A stretch of DNA of 64,000 nt from Isurus oxyrinchus (Eukaryota). A program made the translations under genes and the position numbers. Shown here piece by piece: positions 16,108 through 49,783 of the stretch (positions are counted from its first letter, which is position 1; every line of letters starts with the position of its first letter). The notes beneath the pieces are model-generated. The model made no database searches. It was not told where the DNA came from and saw nothing but the letters and a program-made list of their open reading frames with translations. Location of the stretch: assembly GCA_026770705.1 (NCBI GenBank), contig JANJGN010000301.1, forward strand, positions 372,001 to 436,000, given 5' to 3'.

Positions 16108-16379
16108 TATTTGACCAGATCAAATGCTGGTAGAAAGAATTCCTCACAAAAGCCGGGCTAGAACCACGACAGGGGTATTAGATTTAAGAGGATTAACAAC
16201 AGCCAAACAGCCACTTCAGGTCCAACTCAGAGGTATTTTCGAGTAGAAAAACCAAAGAACCTGTTCTCAGAGTGTACCTGTTCCTGGCCACTATCCTGCC
16301 ACAACCTCTCCCTCCCTCCCACTCGGTGCTTCTCATTAACGGCAGTTTATACTGCGTCTGAGCTCACACGCGGTACTCC

Positions 16380-16890
16380 ACTCTCAGTCTTTCTGCAGGA
16401 CACCAGCTCACAATCTCCGACCTCACACCGGGCCGCCCACAATCAGTATTTCTCACTGAGACCAGCTCACACTCTCTGAGATCACACTGGGCCGACCACA
16501 CTCAGTGTTTCTCACTGAGGCCAATTCACACTCTCTGAGCTCACACCGGGCAGCCCACACTCAGCGTTTCTCACTGAGACCAGCTCACAATCTCTGACCT
16601 CACACTGGGCCGCCCACACTCAGTATACCTCACTGAGACCAATTCACACTGTCTGAGCTCACACCAGGCCAACCACACTCAGCGTTTCTTACTGAGGCCA
16701 ATTCACACTCTCTGAGCTCCCATCGGGCTGCCCACACTCAATGTTTCTCACTGAGGCTAATTCACACTCTCTGAGCTCATACCGGGCCGCCCACACTCAA
16801 TCTTTCTCACTGAGGCCAATTCACACTCTCCGAGCTCACACCGGGCCTCCCACACTCAGTGTTTGTCAGTGAGATCAGCTCACACTGAGC
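16380..16890. repeat. 59-bp minisatellite, about 9 copies, upstream of a family A V
   Basis: Unit cacactcagtgtttctcactgaggccaattcacactctctgagctcacaccgggccgcc. The register shifts 1 bp per 60-bp line. Confidence 0.92.
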
Positions 16891-18704: not shown

Positions 18705-19030
18705 CTCGAGGTTTCACACTGACATCGGCTCACCCTGTCACTGAGTGCAGGCTTGACCGCCCACATTAAATATTTCATAGTGGCACCGGCTCAATCTGTC
18801 TCTGAGCTCAGACTGGACTGCCCACTGTCAATATTTCACACAGACACCGGCTCAGCCTGTCTCTGAACTCACACCAGTCCGCCCACGTTGACTATTTCTC
18901 ATTGACACCGGCTCAACCTGTCTCTGAGCTCACACCGGTCCACCCACATTCAATATTTCTCACTGACACCAGTTCACCTTGTCTCTGACCTCACACGCGG
19001 TCGTTCACATTCAATATTTCTCACTGACAC
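18705..19030. repeat. About 60-bp minisatellite, 5-6 copies, related to 16380-16890
   Basis: Unit aatatttctcactgacaccggctcaacctgtctctgagctcacaccggtccgcccacattc. Confidence 0.85.
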
Positions 19031-43127: not shown

Positions 43128-43564
43128 ATGTGTTGTGTTGCACAGTTACAGCTATTATCCATCATTCTGGCGATGCGAACAGGTAGGCACAGGACAGTGA
43201 CCCAATGACCCAGAGTAAGTTTTTCATTATTATTCTCGTTGTTCCAGTGTTTCATAACGTGAATATTTTTCCAGGTCGATGTCTGTCGGACCATGTGCTT
43301 CAATCTCCCGCTTCGGAAACAGTCCAGAGAGGGTATTCGGTGCAAATGGACTGCAACTACGAGGTGTCTGGCTTTTACGCGATGCATTGGTACAGACAGA
43401 AATCCGATCAGGGACTGGAGTGGATTATAAAGCGAGCATCGAATGGCAAAACGAGAAGCGGGAGATTTCAACTGAATCTATCCGAGTCGGAGAAACGCGG
43501 CCAATTGCTGATTGTAGACACTGAGGACGCCGATGCCGCGGTTTATTACTGTGCGGCTGAGCTC
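43128..43564 (+). CDS. TCR alpha/delta V segment (family C), apparently functional; leader 43128-43182, V exon 43275-43564
   Basis: MCCVAQLQLLSIILAMRT|GRCLSDHVLQSPASETVQRGYSVQMDCNYEVSGFYAMHWYRQKSDQGLEWI...DAAVYYCAAEL. Canonical splice sites, no stops. Confidence 0.93.
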
Positions 43565-43603
43565 CACACTGAGACAAAACGCGGCAGTCACTGTACAAAA
43601 ACC
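43565..43603 (+). promoter_or_regulatory. 23-RSS
   Basis: CACACTG + 23 bp + ACAAAAACC. Confidence 0.93.
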
Positions 43604-43709: not shown

Positions 43710-43782
43710 TGCCGCGGGTTGTCTAGTAAATCATAATAGAAACTATGCCGCGGGTTGTCTAGTAAATCTTAATAGAAACTAT
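43710..43782. repeat. 36-bp direct tandem duplication
   Basis: gccgcgggttgtctagtaaatc(a/t)taatagaaactat x2. Confidence 0.85.
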
Positions 43783-45484
43783 GTTTCATTACAGATACAG
43801 ATGGCCACAGCAGGGAGTGTCGGACTGAGGGGGCAGTTAGTCAGTGCGGTCTTTGCAATGTGCGGAGCTTCATTTCCTGATTGTTTCCCAGGGAACCAAA
43901 AGAGACCCTGAGTGCTTATTTTATGCTGTTGTGGGATGATTCTTGAAGAACATTAATATAATTATACAGTAAAGTCCAGTGCTTAAACTGGTTTCCACAA
44001 TGTCGGCATGTATACTCTTGTCCCAAATTATGACCAGTTATCTGAAAGAATGCAACTGCGGGTGAGATTTCCCCCTCCTCTCTTGTGTCTCGCATCAAAA
44101 TATTAACCAAGTTCGAAACACAAACAGAAAGTGCTCGAAATACAACAAGAAACAGAGCGAAAACTCCAGCCTGTGACCTTTCACCAGAAACCAGCAACTC
44201 CTCAAACTGAACTCAAGTGAAATGTCGTAGACATGAATCCTTACTTCTGATTCGCTGTGCACCGATGTTCCCCGATTTGCCGAGTGTGGCCATGATCTTC
44301 TGTCATTATACCGCAAAGAAATTTGGATGGGAGCAGAAAAGCTGATAATTAGACTCGCTTCTGATGATAGAGCCCAGCCAAGTGAAAGTCAGCAGCCATT
44401 CTTATTTCTAACGAGCTGTGGGTCGAGAGTTCATTGTATGTCAAGACAATTTTGAGCCAGATGGGTTTTCAAGAGTAAATTTCATGTTTCCTGTCCATTA
44501 ACCCTGTTAAAAACATTCCTTCAATTCTTCCATTTTCTCACTTGCTTTCTGTGTAGGGACACTTTTCTCAAGTAGAAATTATATCGTGCTATAAAATCAT
44601 TGAATCGTCCAGTGATTATATCGCAGATGGAGACCGTTCGGCCCGTGCTGACTCACTTCAAGTGCAATTTACCTGGTCCCGGTCTTTTCTCTCTAGCTAT
44701 GCATTTTTTTTGTTTGCTTTTCTGATTATTCATTAATTCCCTATTGAAATGAACGATTGGATCTGCTGCCACCACGTACTCAGACTGTATATTCCAGATT
44801 TGGATTACTCAGTCTATGGAAAAAGGTTTTCATCATGTCGCCGTTCGCTCTTTTGCCAATCTCTTTATATCAGTATCCTCTGGTGCTCAATCCATCCTTA
44901 GCTACACTGCCTATTTCCTGAATTTTTATAATCTCCATAGCTTGCCTAACCCATCCACGTAACTGAAAGTTATTTAAATGGTCCATTCCCATGAGTCTAT
45001 TTGGCACCCTCTTTCATGCCTCTACATCCCTCCGAAACTGCGATGACCAGAACAGAGCACAATACTCCAGTTGAGGCCGAGTGTTTTGCACAGTTTGATA
45101 AAAATCCCCTTGTTTTTATCCTCTATGTCCTACTTATAAAGCCCTGCACGCCGTATACTTTTGTAATTGATTTGTCAATCTGCTCTATTCGATAAACTCA
45201 CACTTGGGTGATTATGAATCGGCCAAATACGCATTTTTCCTGGGAAATAAAGGACGTGAGAACGTGAAATACTTTCACGAATTATATTTACTGGAACATT
45301 GGACGGAGAGGAAAATTGAAGGGTGGGAGGAGCGAGAAGGAAATGCAGAGCTCATCAGTTTAATCACTTTATCCTATGCGGTAAAATGCTAACAACCTTT
45401 GAGAAAATATTCTTGAATAATATTTGTATTCCCAACATCTCTGCACTCTGTTGCCATTGTCTGACTCTAATCCCACCATGTTCA

Positions 45485-45895
45485 GGGTTTTGGACAGCTC
45501 TGTCCCTGCGCTGTATCACTGTGTGTCTGTAATCCTAGTAAGTTCAGGTTTTTGTACAGGTCTGTCCCTGCGCTGCATCACTGTATGTCTGTATCCCCAC
45601 CATGTTCAGGTTTTTGTACAGATCTCTCCGTGTTCTGTATTACTGTGTGTCTGCAATTCCACCATGTTCAGGTTTTCGTACTGCTCTCTCCGTGCTATGT
45701 ATCACTGTGTGTCTGTAATCCCACCATGTTCAGGTTTTTGTACAGATCTCTCCGTGTTCTGTATTACTGTGTGTCTGCAATCCCACCATGTTCAGGTTTT
45801 CGTACTGCTCTCTCCGTGCTATGTATCACTGTGTGTCTGTAATCCCACCATGTGCAGGTTTTTGTACGGCTCTCTCCCTCCTCTGTATCACTGCG
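45485..45895 (-). repeat. Tandem array of seven 23-RSSs (62-bp period)
   Basis: Nonamer (reverse complement) starts at 45485, 45547, 45609, 45671, 45733, 45795 and 45857. Each is followed by exactly 23 bp and a heptamer (rc: cactgtg, cactgta, tactgtg, cactgtg, tactgtg, cactgtg, cactgcg). Confidence 0.95.
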
Positions 45896-45900
45896 CTGTG

Positions 45901-46193
45901 CGGCCACTCAATGCACAGTAATACACAGCAGAGTCGCTTAGCTGTAGTTTGGAGATATTTAACCGGTTGATTTTCTAGGCATAATCGATAGAAGCAGAAA
46001 TTGTCAGCATTTTCTTTATTCTCCTCTCCTGAAATGTGTTTCTGAAGAGGATATTCCTGAGCGTGTCCTGGGGAATGACGGTACCAGAGAACTGTGTAAT
46101 GACAGAATCCTGAATATTCATAGCTTAAAGTATGGGTTTCACCAACAGCAGAGGTTTTTAGAGGCGGATCCTGGGATATCATTGAACGATAAT
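45901..46193 (-). pseudogene. NAR-TCR supporting V-delta (leaderless, CDR1 Cys), pseudogene
   Basis: Acceptor ctgcag|46193. DYRSMISQDPPLKTSAVGETHTLSYEYSGFCHYTVLWYRHSPG...(frameshift) ISASIDYA*KINRLNISKLQLSDSAVYYCALSG. First Cys changed to Tyr. No leader seen; in phase with the J at 48882. Confidence 0.85.
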
Positions 46194-48881
46194 CTGCAGG
46201 AGAAAAATTGGATATTATTCTTTTTAGCTACTGTTTATTCGAGGAAACTTGTTTATCACAGTAGGTGTTCTGGCTTTGGATGAAGTTTGTTTAATTTGTA
46301 ACTTCCTCTAACTTCATTCACCGTTACTGAAATATGAACCAGTGAAAGGATGAGGTTTTTTTTGTGTTTCACTGCGAGTTCTTACTATTTGGCATGCATT
46401 GCCTGAAAGGATAGTGAGCTCGGTTAAGGGTATTCTCCAAACGTGTAATGGACAAGTGTTTGTTGGAACACGAATAAACGCAGGACCACGGGGAGAAAGA
46501 GTGATGGGTTAATTGGGTTGCATTTTTAGAGAGGCAGCACTGACACGATGGACCGCATTTCAAACTGCCGTGCTGAATTTAATGGGCATTACATTTCTGT
46601 TTCTATTTTTCCAGAGGACACATTTTATTATCAGTGGGACAATCAATTCCCAAAAATTATTGTCCAAGACTAACCGAACTGTGTAGCATCAGTGAGCACA
46701 GCAAGATCCAAAATAACCTCATGAGATTCATCAGCACCGTTTGGGCCAAACCGATAGTGAACATCGGTGGACAAAAGTGCTGAAGTTTAATAAATTCGGG
46801 AGTTTCTGAGCTTTTTGATCTACTGCTCTATATTCAACTAACAATAGGGCCCAATTTTCTCCGTCTCCTTTTAATTTGAAATATTTACAGTTAGTTTCAT
46901 TTTATTTTACATTACCTTTGTGCTGTTTGTGCTTTTTGCAATCATGGGAACTTGTCCCAAAGTCTCTCGGTTGTCGGTTGGGTTCAGTCTGTTCAGTTTC
47001 CGCAGTGGTTTTACTGTTACTCACTGGGAACCGCCTCTTCCGGCTCCCTGACAACTTCAATTCTTTCCGCCCAATGACTGATTCTGAGCGCGTTCTCTGG
47101 GCGGAGTTTTCTAGAATTTTGCATTATACACAATCTGCAGAAGAGAAATAGGCCATTCGGCCTAACTGATTGATGCCTATGTTTAAACTCCAGACCAGCC
47201 TGCCCTGCCCGAAATGTAAATGACCATTTCGATCCACGTCCTTCTGCCTGTCTATTCCGCTCTCCCTCTTGTATTTTCAAGTCTTCTCATAAATCCATCA
47301 ATGCTCCCTGCTCCAGCCAGTCCATGTGACCTCCAGTTCCGCATTCTGATACGTGTTGATGCAAATGTTTTCTTCTTAGTGTCTTTATGTTTTCAGTTAG
47401 TGGCCAGTTTATAATAATCTCCTATTGCTCTGGACTCGGCCACAAATTAACCGTTGCTCCACTTCCACCCGAATGAACCCTTCATAATAAAAAGGTTTCG
47501 TTGATTTCTCCTCGTGATTTCCTCTTTTACAGAGAACAATGACCCAGCTTGTTCAATCTTTCCAGAGAGACGTGGATTGTTGCTGATTTCATTTCTCAGG
47601 AATGTAAGAAATCAAAGCAGAGAACGTAACAAAGAGAAGGAGGAGGTGCCACAGCTCCTCCATTCAATAACATCGTGGCTGATCTCCGTCTTAAACATCA
47701 CATTACAGCAATGTCCAAACAACCCTATATTCTATCGAATAACGCTTTAAATAGAGTCAGCACTGAGTATCCAAAGCTCTCTCAGGAACAAACTCACAAC
47801 AATGGTTTGACTTCTCCTCTTCTCAGTTCTAATGGCCGAATCTTTCTTCTGAAACTTTGACCCATAGTTATAGACTTCCCAGCCTTGGGAAAAATCCACC
47901 GGGAATCTGCCCTGCCCTCCATTTTGCATGTTTTTGAATGAGATTACCTCTCAATTCCTCGAAACTCAGGGGAACATTGGCCCAGCCTATTCAATCTCTT
48001 CTCATAAGACAATCCCTTGACCTCAGGAATCACTCTGATGAACCTTTGTTGCATTCGCTCCAAAGGAATTAGATCTTTTCCTAACGGTGAGGTCAAGGCT
48101 TTACCTAGCATTCCAGGCTGGAGCCCGTTGCGGCCATCCCCTCCATAAACCTCACCCCCAACCCTCACGCCGGAAAGCATTTTGAACGGCCCCCTGAGAT
48201 CATCCAACCCTTCTCTTCATTTCGATTATTATTGTTCCCTTATGTTCTTGTTCTTCTTTATCACTTTAGTGCATCATCCTCACTCTCTCTCCGCTCAGGC
48301 TTGTTTTAATTCACAGAAACCGGAGATACAGATAAATCAAAGCAATCCGATCTCTGAAACATCTGCACTTAAAATAATAAAAGTCAGCGGTTCCAACCTT
48401 AAAAACGATTAGGATTGTGAGTCCGAGGCATTGATGGTTCCTGATGTGTCAACGAAACCAATAATGATCCATGTGCAACGAACCCCTATGCCCCACCCAA
48501 CCCTTCCTTCCCTCGCCCACCGCCCTACACCAAGACCTCCACCCACCCTGACCACGCTGAACGCCTAGTCCGTCAGGTCTCACACATAGTTTCGCCCAGA
48601 CATCTGACCTGACTCCCTAATCCGATTCTGATCCCAAATCGAAAAAGGCAATGGAGAGGCTTCCTTAGAAAACCCGTCAGTTTTCGTTTTATTGGGACTA
48701 GACTGATAATGATCACAATAATAACTAATAAGCAGACGGTGAACATTACCCTGGACAGGCTGTAACGCGACGGGTGGGAGTCGGGGGCAGGGGGATAAGT
48801 GGTAAGGCGGCGGTTGGGGGGTGGGGGGGTGGCGGGGAGAGGGCGGGGTGCGGTAGGGCGGCTGCGGTTGGATTCACTTAC

Positions 48882-48973
48882 CGGCTGTGACAGTCACCAC
48901 CGTCCCGGATCCAGCCGCATAATCAGTAACCCACCACAGTGACACCGCTCACAATCTCCCCGGTACAACAACC
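48882..48973 (-). other. NAR-TCR J segment with 5' 23-RSS
   Basis: Coding 48934-48882 WVTDYAAGSGTVVTVTA followed by G|GTAAGT donor. RSS heptamer 48935-48941 (CACAGTG on +), 23 bp, nonamer ACAACAACC 48965-48973. Confidence 0.88.
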
Positions 48974-49287
48974 ACCGACACCTCAACCTGCCGGCAAATC
49001 ATCATCAGGCAGTAGAAACTGCCCAAATATGCAGCGCATTTAAATAAACAACGTTATTCAATGTTTCAAAGTCTCTGTCGCTTCAAGCTGTTCTTTGTGA
49101 GGCCCTGAGGCCTGAGCAAATGGTGCCGGGAACGAGATGTTCGCTTCATGTAAACCGAGAGAAATATCAAAGAAAGATAACTGAATGGTGGAAATTACAA
49201 TGAAATGTAACCAGATTCCAGCGATAATAACATCGACCCGACAATTCACCATTTGGGCCATGATAATTTATGTTTTAATTGTACAGA

Positions 49288-49783
49288 GTTATTTGTTCAG
49301 GCCTTTTCCACTGTGCTTTACCAATGTTGTGCCACTACTGACGTTTACAGTAATAGGTGGCCGTGTCTTCAATTCTTACATCCCGAATTTCCAGCAAAAA
49401 TGTCTTTCTTGTTTTGTTCACCGACACAACAAATCTTCCGCCGTCGAGGATCCTCTCCCGCTCTGTCCCAGTCTCGATGTTTTTGAAGAAATGTCCCGCT
49501 TGCAACTAATGCCGCTAATAGAAAACACAAGCGGTGGTAAGAGACTGACACTCCTTCCTGGTCACCGCTGCCGGGATCTGTGACACTGACTGACTGAAAG
49601 ATCCTGGAAATTAAACAAAGAGAGTTCAATAGACCATCGAAGTCGAACCAGAGAACGATGTCAAAACCCCAGACAGTGTCTGTAATGGGGATGGACTCGG
49701 GCAGCTTTATATTGAATCCACACAATGTCGGTTTGTTTGATCGGTACTCACGGGGTAAACAGACACACAAGGAGGATTCCCAT
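49288..49783 (-). pseudogene. NAR-TCR V (IgNAR-like V), apparently V-D germline-joined, with 12-RSS; pseudogene
   Basis: Leader MGILLVCLFT 49783-49752 (gtgagt donor, phase shifted). Exon 49603-49316 reads GSFSQSVSQIPAAVTRKECQSLTTACVFY*RH*LQAGHFFKNIETGTERERILDGGRFVVSVNKTRKTFLLEIRDVRIEDTATYYCKRQ*WHNIGK. RSS CACAGTG (49315-49309) + 12 bp + ACAAATAAC (49296-49288). Confidence 0.87.

What the first reader, a model, noticed from the sequence alone, without database searches (positions are those of the whole stretch)
45485..45900. Seven head-to-tail 23-RSSs form a minisatellite behind the NAR-TCR supporting V-delta
Seen: a 62-bp unit made of heptamer (7) + spacer (23) + nonamer (9) + linker (23), repeated 7 times in the V's orientation with the spacer length kept in every copy. 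Copies 3-6 alternate as an ABAB 124-bp dimer, and a decayed eighth copy may lie at about 45421-45470. Five copies keep the essential CAC. The V-proximal copy is damaged (CGCAGTG, preceded by an extra CACAG). Established: RAG1/2 cleaves at CAC heptamers under the 12/23 rule, and a V normally has one RSS. Inference: this is a cluster of potential RAG cut sites. It could act as a recombination decoy or deleting element, allow serial or secondary rearrangement, or donate the linker (TGAACATGGTGGGATTACAGACA, which includes a TRDD-like GGGATTAC) as extra junctional sequence. Unit borders fall at the heptamer edge, compatible with slippage or with germline RAG signal-end events. I know of no described RSS tandem array like this, but could not search.
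Basis: partly seen in the sequence, partly recalled or inferred. Interest (0 to 1): 0.92.

Follow-up and report, generated by a model that had tools for sequence, protein, structure and literature searches.

The report
Repeated recombination signals behind dead V
A broken shark T-cell-receptor V gene is followed by seven head-to-tail copies of its "cut here" recombination signal, an old repeat shared by this V family in other sharks that looks like a tolerated, drifting passenger and not a purpose-built device.

Summary
On the minus strand, 45462-45900, seven gap-free 62-nt units follow the V end. Each is heptamer, 23-nt spacer, nonamer and 23-nt linker. Five keep CAC, the four inner units form a duplicated 124-nt dimer (121/124), and the V-proximal heptamer is CGCAGTG. 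The proposed eighth copy is weak.

This cassette is dead. The supporting V has Tyr for Cys23, a net 8-nt loss that shifts the frame, and a TAG. The NAR V has three stops and an out-of-frame leader.

Short-read contigs of the same species confirm both array borders. A sister species carries the distal units at the same place. The copy number of seven could not be confirmed, because no long reads were available.

V-frame read-through in named gene models shows at least 2 units at 58-61-nt steps in whale shark and epaulette shark. An unnamed contig shows 5 units.

Best reading: an inherited RSS minisatellite, remodelled by unequal exchange and inert here. Signal columns vary as much as the others (6/16 vs 20/46).

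This scan had already noted such arrays on other DNA of this genome. My six paper searches found no description.

The parts
45462..45900 (-). Whole array: 5-nt CACAG (45896-45900) plus seven 62-nt units, each heptamer 7 + spacer 23 + nonamer 9 + linker 23
45834..45895 (-). Unit 1 (V-proximal): CGCAGTG / ACAAAAACC. Heptamer position 2 is G, so CAC is lost
45772..45833 (-). Unit 2 (type A): CACAGTG / ACGAAAACC
45710..45771 (-). Unit 3 (type B): CACAGTA / ACAAAAACC
45648..45709 (-). Unit 4 (type A, 61/62 identical to unit 2)
45586..45647 (-). Unit 5 (type B, 60/62 identical to unit 3)
45524..45585 (-). Unit 6: TACAGTG / ACAAAAACC. Heptamer position 1 is T, and the linker is the most diverged
45462..45523 (-). 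Unit 7 (distal): CACAGTG / CCAAAACCC
45901..46193 (-). Supporting V-delta exon, leaderless, with acceptor AG at 46195-46194. It is a pseudogene: TAT (Tyr) at 46120-46122 where 9 of 11 homologues have Cys; a net 8-nt loss at about 46002-46005 that shifts the frame; TAG at 45975-45977
   Evidence: X1 contigs 45824-46034 (no gap) and 46010-46905
48881..48973 (-). NAR-TCR J (WVTDYAAGSGTVVTVTA, donor g|gtaagt) with its 23-RSS at 48935-48973
49288..49783 (-). NAR-type V. ATG at 49783-49781, with a leader that by eye is out of frame with the V exon. The V exon carries three in-frame TAG stops and has lost the Trp of WYR. A 12-RSS lies at 49288-49315
   Evidence: homologue leaders

Best explanation
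This is a minisatellite whose repeat unit is the V gene's own 23-bp-spacer recombination signal plus about 23 nt of its 3' flank.

Origin (shown in part, inferred in part): the trait was inherited from an ancestral NAR-TCR supporting V-delta gene. It spread with the cassettes as they duplicated. Unequal exchange or replication slippage keeps remodelling it locally.

This array: all seven units share a 62-nt period that relatives do not have, and a 124-nt dimer was duplicated recently.

This cassette: the array does nothing for receptor assembly. The NAR V, its leader and the supporting V are all broken, and the V-proximal heptamer has lost CAC.

Intact paralogues (inferred): the extra copies would be cleavable by RAG. 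Only a cut at the V-proximal copy leaves a normal coding end. A cut at copy k would carry (k-1) units into the junction. The extra copies are therefore tolerated or mildly wasteful passengers that drift and decay.
For: Structure:
- Gap-free 62-nt array.
- The inner units are the youngest and the outer ones the most diverged: 61/62 and 60/62 against 47-54/62; dimers 121/124.

No sign that the signal parts are protected:
- Variable columns are 6 of 16 in heptamer plus nonamer, against 20 of 46 in spacer plus linker (Fisher p = 0.77).
- Two of seven units carry hits in the CAC triad.

Dead cassette.

The V frame meets TGA four codons after the V end.

Reads:
- X1 contigs, same species but not identical to the assembly, cross both array borders: 44400-45621 with 4 differences, and 45824-46034 with 1 difference and no gap.
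- In the sister species B, contig 45320-45621 differs at 5 of 302 positions. The flank 44471-45348 differs at 18 of 878. The array is diverging at about the flank's rate.
- Summed contig depth over the inner units is 650-2992 against about 19 in the flank. Similar units therefore occur many times elsewhere. The tool warns that this is not a copy number.

Relatives: 11 germline-like gene-model tails are at least 40 aa long.
- 6 show at least 2 nonamer signatures at 58-64-nt steps: Rhincodon typus P0012, Hemiscyllium ocellatum P0015, P0079, P0082 and P0085, and the unnamed contig P0008 with five.
- By my reading of the protein tails, the second unit in three H. ocellatum genes has about a 20-nt spacer and no CAC. 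In whale shark P0012 it begins TAC. Downstream copies decay.

cDNA: 0 of 3 cDNA-like NAR-TCR chains (P0010, P0043, P0045) carry a unit-like insert in CDR3.

Background: minisatellites are common here. Four other arrays with periods of 36-61 nt lie in the same 64 kb.
Against: - Arrays seen in at least two shark orders besides this genome, and in many cassettes of this genome (scan notes), mean long persistence. A useless repeat would be expected to be lost more often.
- There is no indel in 434 nt at about 16% divergence, so every unit keeps both 23-nt lengths. With a recalled neutral indel-to-substitution ratio near 0.1, about three indels would be expected (P of none about 0.05).
- P0008 keeps heptamer and nonamer signatures in all five units.
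- A period of 61-62 nt is close to six helical turns, so the signals sit on one face of the helix.
- No data here show whether RAG cuts any copy.
Confidence: 0.7

Rival explanations
1. The array is kept by selection in the V family. A row of phased 23-RSSs acts as a landing pad. It raises the chance that RAG captures this particular V for the second rearrangement of a doubly rearranging gene, or it allows a retry after a failed join. The copy in this window is then a dead relic of a working device.
For: - The trait is seen in whale shark, epaulette shark, an unnamed contig, this species and its sister species.
- No indels in seven units, and the 23-nt spacer kept in 7 of 7.
- Five of five units in P0008 keep both signatures.
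- Inference: the supporting V is the only V that can serve a given NAR V-D-J, so its capture matters more than that of an ordinary V.
Against: - A retry cannot help by simple logic. Only the V-proximal cut gives a normal junction, and that cut removes all the other copies.
- Signal columns vary as much as non-signal columns.
- Second units in H. ocellatum and R. typus models look crippled.
- Two Carcharodon models (P0051, P0069) show no RSS-like repeat after the first heptamer.
- The array persists unchanged in kind behind a thoroughly dead V here.
Confidence: 0.17
2. The array was created by germline RAG activity, through re-joining of signal ends at the heptamer border. Slippage did not start it and only remodelled it afterwards.
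For: - The V-side end of the repeat lies at the CACAG that abuts the coding end.
- Germline RAG activity in cartilaginous fish is established from germline-joined Ig genes (recalled, not read here).
Against: - The distal end has no sharp border.
- With a 62-nt unit, a border within a few nt of the heptamer is expected by chance about 1 time in 12.
- The ABAB dimer and the lineage-specific periods of 58-63 nt need only unequal exchange.
- No hybrid-joint footprint can be recognised.
Confidence: 0.08
3. The copy number, or the array itself, is an assembly artefact.
For: - No record spans the array. The inner units are covered only by short high-depth contigs.
- One X1 contig joins 45365 to 45822, and another goes back from 45761 to 45716.
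Against: - Independent contigs enter the array from both sides with 4 and 1 differences.
- The sister species holds units 7, 6 and part of 5 at the same place.
- Related genes of other species show the same kind of repeat.
Confidence: 0.05

Closest known systems
Canonical single 23-RSS behind a TCR/Ig V segment
   Same: Heptamer CACAGTG, a 23-nt spacer and an A-rich nonamer, in the V's orientation. The unit scores are as close to consensus (1-2 mismatches) as the 10 single RSSs of this window (0-3 mismatches).
   Different: There are seven in tandem instead of one. The one next to the coding end has lost CAC and is preceded by an extra CACAG.
Minisatellite (tandem repeat of 10-100 bp evolving by unequal exchange or slippage)
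   Same: Head-to-tail units, a higher-order dimer, young inner copies and diverged outer copies, and a period that differs between lineages.
   Different: The unit is a complete recombination signal, so each copy is a potential site of programmed DNA breakage in lymphocytes.
Isolated deleting RSSs (kappa deleting element, deltaRec/psiJalpha); recalled, not read here
   Same: RSSs that are not needed to make a coding joint and could drive non-productive deletions.
   Different: Those are single and conserved, with shown use. Here the copies are repeats of the V's own signal with no evidence of use.
NAR-TCR cassette of cartilaginous fish (Criscitiello et al. 2006: recalled, paper not held; review passages read)
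   Same: NAR-type V with leader, J with splice donor, and a leaderless supporting V-delta with acceptor and the CDR1 Cys (YSGFC).
   Different: Every coding part except the J is broken here. The tandem RSS array is not mentioned in any passage I could read.

Membership tests
Functional 23-RSS | Heptamer begins with CAC | tested here: met
   5 of 7 units (2, 3, 4, 5, 7). Unit 1 has CGC and unit 6 has TAC. Met for those five only.
Functional 23-RSS | Spacer of 23 +/- 1 nt | tested here: met
   7 of 7 units have 23 nt, with no indels in the array.
Functional 23-RSS | A-rich nonamer with the central A-tract | tested here: met
   6 of 7 keep the A run. Unit 7 is CCAAAACCC. Units 2 and 4 have G at position 3.
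Functional 23-RSS | Heptamer abuts a coding segment | tested here: not met
   Units 2-7 abut a linker, not coding DNA. Unit 1 is set off from the V end by CACAG.
Functional 23-RSS | Cleaved by RAG in lymphocytes | not testable with these tools
   No RNA holder and no raw lymphoid reads were available.
Minisatellite | Head-to-tail copies of a 10-100 bp unit, with higher-order repeats | tested here: met
   Period 62, 6.9 copies. The 124-nt dimers match 121/124.
Minisatellite | Copy-number variation between alleles or relatives | tested here: inconclusive
   Contigs break inside the array. Two odd joints in X1 may be paralogues. Relatives show 2 to 5 or more units, but only as lower bounds.
NAR-TCR supporting V-delta | Leaderless V exon spliced in phase to an upstream NAR J | tested here: met
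   The J donor g|gtaagt and the acceptor cag| give the frame DYRSMISQDPP....
NAR-TCR supporting V-delta | Sequence kinship with second V domains of two-V-domain chains | tested here: met
   42 hits. The best hits align at residues about 127-236 of NAR-TCR-like gene models from named sharks, at 48-68% identity.
NAR-TCR supporting V-delta | Open reading frame with both canonical cysteines | tested here: not met
   Tyr replaces Cys23, and there is a frameshift and a TAG. It is a pseudogene member.
Deleting element (isolated RSS used for locus deletion) | Demonstrated joins to a partner RSS that delete intervening DNA | not testable with these tools
   No lymphoid DNA or RNA reads were available.

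The most novel reading that the evidence does not exclude
Tandem, helically phased 23-RSS arrays are a selected and ancient feature of NAR-TCR supporting V genes. They would serve as a RAG landing pad that secures the second rearrangement of a doubly rearranging receptor gene. The window would then hold a fossil of such a device. The evidence that leaves this open: persistence across shark orders, the absence of any indel in seven units, and five fully signed units in one relative.
Probability: 0.15. Interest if true: 0.85.

Novelty: new variant of a known kind. Interest (0 to 1): 0.5.

Why it matters
V segments are taught to carry one recombination signal. A V family that has carried rows of them across shark lineages is a natural experiment. 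It bears on how RAG chooses among adjacent signals, on how much wasteful cleavage a locus tolerates, and on how programmed-break sites behave as repeats in the germline. This particular copy is a dead cassette. It serves mainly as a neutral baseline against which arrays behind intact Vs can be tested for selection.

Tried and rejected
Eighth decayed copy: only a 14-nt linker-like match, out of register, reached by 30 of 1000 shuffles. I left it out of the parts.

D-like linker: the array holds no 12-RSS. Rejected.

Retry ('ratchet') model: rejected on logic. Only the V-proximal cut gives a normal junction, and that cut removes all the other copies. Here the V frame also stops after four codons.

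Searching the array part of P0008 against the protein collection found only P0008 itself.

An exact-pattern scan of metagenome contigs for two perfect tandem RSSs found nothing. This is a weak null, because the pattern would not match the window's own imperfect units either.

Papers: six searches gave no description of tandem RSS arrays. I saw listings and abstract starts only. I read passages of PMC12227049, PMC6795676 and PMC3457774. Criscitiello 2006 (by DOI and as PMC1458790) and PMC7909615 are not held. These primary NAR-TCR germline papers, and any supplements, could hold a figure showing the repeat that I could not see. I did not ask for supplements.

Sawfish: the scan notes' claim could not be confirmed. 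Pristis P0014 shows one unit and then ends.

An information-content (RIC) score was not computed, because no model parameters were on hand.

Full report
WHAT IS THERE

Read on the minus strand, a V exon ends ...YYCALSGR at 45901. It is followed by CACAG and then seven gap-free 62-nt units running down to 45462.

Tandem Repeats Finder reports period 62, 6.9 copies, 84% matches, no indels and score 600.

A 23-RSS pattern with up to 3 mismatches hits 17 times in the window, against 0.84 expected. Seven of the hits lie at exact 62-nt steps inside the array. The other ten are isolated single signals behind other segments.

Each unit is heptamer (7), spacer (23), nonamer (9) and linker (23). Five of the seven keep CAC. 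Unit 1 reads CGCAGTG, unit 6 reads TACAGTG, and unit 7 has the weakest nonamer, CCAAAACCC.

Units 2 and 4 match 61/62, and units 3 and 5 match 60/62. The two 124-nt dimers match 121/124. The outer units match the others at only 47-54/62.

The linker occurs nowhere else in the window, and the array holds no 12-RSS.

The proposed eighth copy is not convincing. It is a 14-nt match, out of register, and 30 of 1000 shuffles score as well.

THE GENE IT BELONGS TO

The V exon is leaderless. Its acceptor at 46195-46194 is in phase with the donor of an upstream J (WVTDYAAGSGTVVTVTA, 48881-48934). That J has a 23-RSS at 48935-48973. A NAR-type V with leader and 12-RSS lies further upstream. From recall, this is the NAR-TCR cassette layout. 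The primary paper is not held; review passages were read.

A HMMER search with the N-terminal piece of the V found 42 proteins. The best are two-V-domain gene models that NCBI names from these species:
- Cetorhinus maximus
- Scyliorhinus canicula
- Heterodontus francisci
- Chiloscyllium plagiosum
- Rhincodon typus
- Pristis pectinata
- Hemiscyllium ocellatum
- Mustelus asterias

In these models the match falls in the second V domain.

The cassette is dead. In the supporting V:
- The WYR part and the YYC part are in different frames.
- Against 11 homologues the window lacks the four residues AGGR, a net 8 nt. It has TAG where they have E, K or T. It has Tyr where 9 of 11 have the first Cys.

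The same-species contigs support this reading. One crosses the deletion site without a gap. Another confirms the Tyr codon, and its only difference from the window is at 46158. The single difference in the contig that covers the TAG was not listed, so I could not place it.

A loose end in two runs of the sister species carries ten letters where the window has two. That restores the frame and agrees with the protein alignment, though those contigs may come from paralogues.

The NAR V has three in-frame TAGs and has lost the Trp of WYR. By eye, its leader is out of frame with the V exon when compared with the homologues' MGILLVFTLCVCLPR.

IS THE ARRAY REAL?

All four runs laid were short-read contigs. 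None spans the array.

In species A, a contig runs from 44400 to 45621 with 4 differences. It passes from the unique flank through units 7 and 6 into unit 5. Another runs from 45824 to 46034 with 1 difference, from unit 2's edge through unit 1 into the V. Because these contigs differ from the window at a few sites, they are not simply the assembly itself.

In species B, whose flank differs at 18 of 878 positions, a contig covers 45320-45621 with 5 differences in 302. The array therefore sits at the same place in the sister species and diverges at about the flank's rate.

The inner units are covered only by short contigs of very high summed depth, 650-2992 against about 19. Near-identical units therefore occur many times elsewhere in both genomes. 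The tool warns that this depth is not a copy number.

Two odd joints in X1 remain unexplained: 45365 to 45822, and 45761 back to 45716.

The count of seven is not independently confirmed.

RELATIVES

Some gene models run on in the V frame past the V end, and so translate whatever follows. I took heptamer and nonamer signatures in the three codon phases and their spacing.

Of the 89 proteins on file, 53 had a recognisable V end. Eight of these were flagged as joined to J or C. A ninth, P0087, is J-joined but was mis-flagged as germline-like.

Eleven germline-like tails are at least 40 aa long, which is enough to reach a second nonamer:
- Six show at least two nonamer signatures at 58-64-nt steps. 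These are whale shark P0012 (step 61), epaulette shark P0015 (59) and P0079, P0082 and P0085 (58 each), and the unnamed contig P0008 with five units (step 61).
- One (P0083) shows one signature.
- Four (P0048, P0051, P0052, P0054) show not even a first RSS. Those models run into other sequence.

The remaining tails are shorter than 40 aa. Most of them end at ...TAQ-stop, that is ACA GCN CAG TGA. So the CACAG before the first 23-spaced heptamer is a family trait, not damage private to this copy.

A conventional V, P0027, shows one signature and no repeat. It serves as a control.

Sawfish P0014 and sawshark P0075 show one unit and only the start of a possible second. I could not confirm the sawfish claim in the scan's earlier notes.

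By my reading of the protein tails, the second units in three epaulette-shark genes have about a 20-nt spacer and no CAC. The second unit in whale shark P0012 begins TAC.

Three cDNA-like NAR-TCR chains (P0010, P0043, P0045) have ordinary CDR3s with no unit-like insert. P0045 keeps ...RSAH, which suggests that the coding end reaches up to the 23-spaced heptamer.

HOW IT MOST LIKELY WORKS

Shown:
- The repeat is a minisatellite of RSS units.
- It is older than the split of species A and B, and the same kind of repeat occurs in two orectolobiform sharks.
- Its period differs between lineages: 62 nt here, 61, and 58-60. All seven units here share the 62-nt length, so this array was rebuilt from one unit after that length arose.
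- The inner dimer is a recent duplication.
- Signal columns vary as much as the others: 6/16 against 20/46, p = 0.77.

Inferred:
- Unequal exchange or slippage keeps the array turning over while cassettes duplicate.
- In intact paralogues RAG could cut any good copy, but only the V-proximal cut gives a usable junction.
- Here, reading through meets TGA after four codons.
- The extra copies are therefore passengers that waste some attempts at worst. In this cassette nothing can be made at all.

WHAT SPEAKS FOR MORE

- Long persistence across lineages.
- No indel in 434 nt at about 16% divergence.
- A period near six helical turns.
- Five fully signed units in P0008.

These points keep a selected 'landing pad' reading alive at about 15%. 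A RAG-made origin cannot be told apart from slippage with these data.

PRIOR KNOWLEDGE

This scan had already noted such arrays at many other places in this genome, and follow-ups there reached a similar verdict. I took from those notes the lead to look at relatives, and tested it independently through named gene models.

Six literature searches found no description of tandem RSS arrays. The primary NAR-TCR germline papers and their supplements could not be read.

VERDICT

The functional ideas are not supported for this dead cassette. The class is a new variant of a known kind: a recombination signal turned minisatellite. Interest is moderate.

Noticed in passing
window 16357-16886 and 18712-19030: Two related minisatellites (59 nt x 9 and 61 nt x 5.2) share the core ...TCTGAGCTCACACCGG.CCGCCCACA... 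They lie between V segments and are not RSS-like by eye.
   Followed up: no
window 45006-45106 and 46925-47126: Summed contig depth is very high in all four runs (up to about 20000, against 19-50 in the flanks). These are high-copy repeats flanking the V and the array. A joint 45078->47144 with 35 inserted letters appears in X1 and X5.
   Followed up: no
window 45365->45822 and 45761->45716 (run X1): One contig skips the whole array, and another goes back 46 nt with 14 inserted letters. They could be paralogous arrays or alleles of different length.
   Followed up: no
window 46158: Run X1 has G where the window has T. This turns Lys into Gln (PPLKTS to PPLQTS, the residue that homologues have). 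It is an allelic difference inside the pseudogene.
   Followed up: partly
proteins P0051 and P0069 (Carcharodon carcharias gene models): After ...TAH/TAQC the V-frame tail reads TKMNQ(I/F)ILFC..., with no RSS-like spacer or repeat. A subfamily (one model with two NAR V domains) may lack the array, or the models may be spliced away.
   Followed up: partly
protein P0054 (Cetorhinus maximus) versus window 43279-43524 (+): After TAQ the gene model's tail resembles an out-of-frame reading of the conventional V that neighbours the array in this window. This looks like an annotation artefact that splices from the heptamer into the next V.
   Followed up: no
window 43205-43603 (+): A V whose open frame runs from the ATG through the whole V into its single 23-RSS at 43565-43603, with no leader intron. 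A 36-nt x 2.1 repeat follows at 43710-43783.
   Followed up: no
window 48974-49287 (-): The NAR V ends with a 12-RSS and the NAR J starts with a 23-RSS about 315 nt later. I did not look for a D segment between them.
   Followed up: no
   Followed up: no
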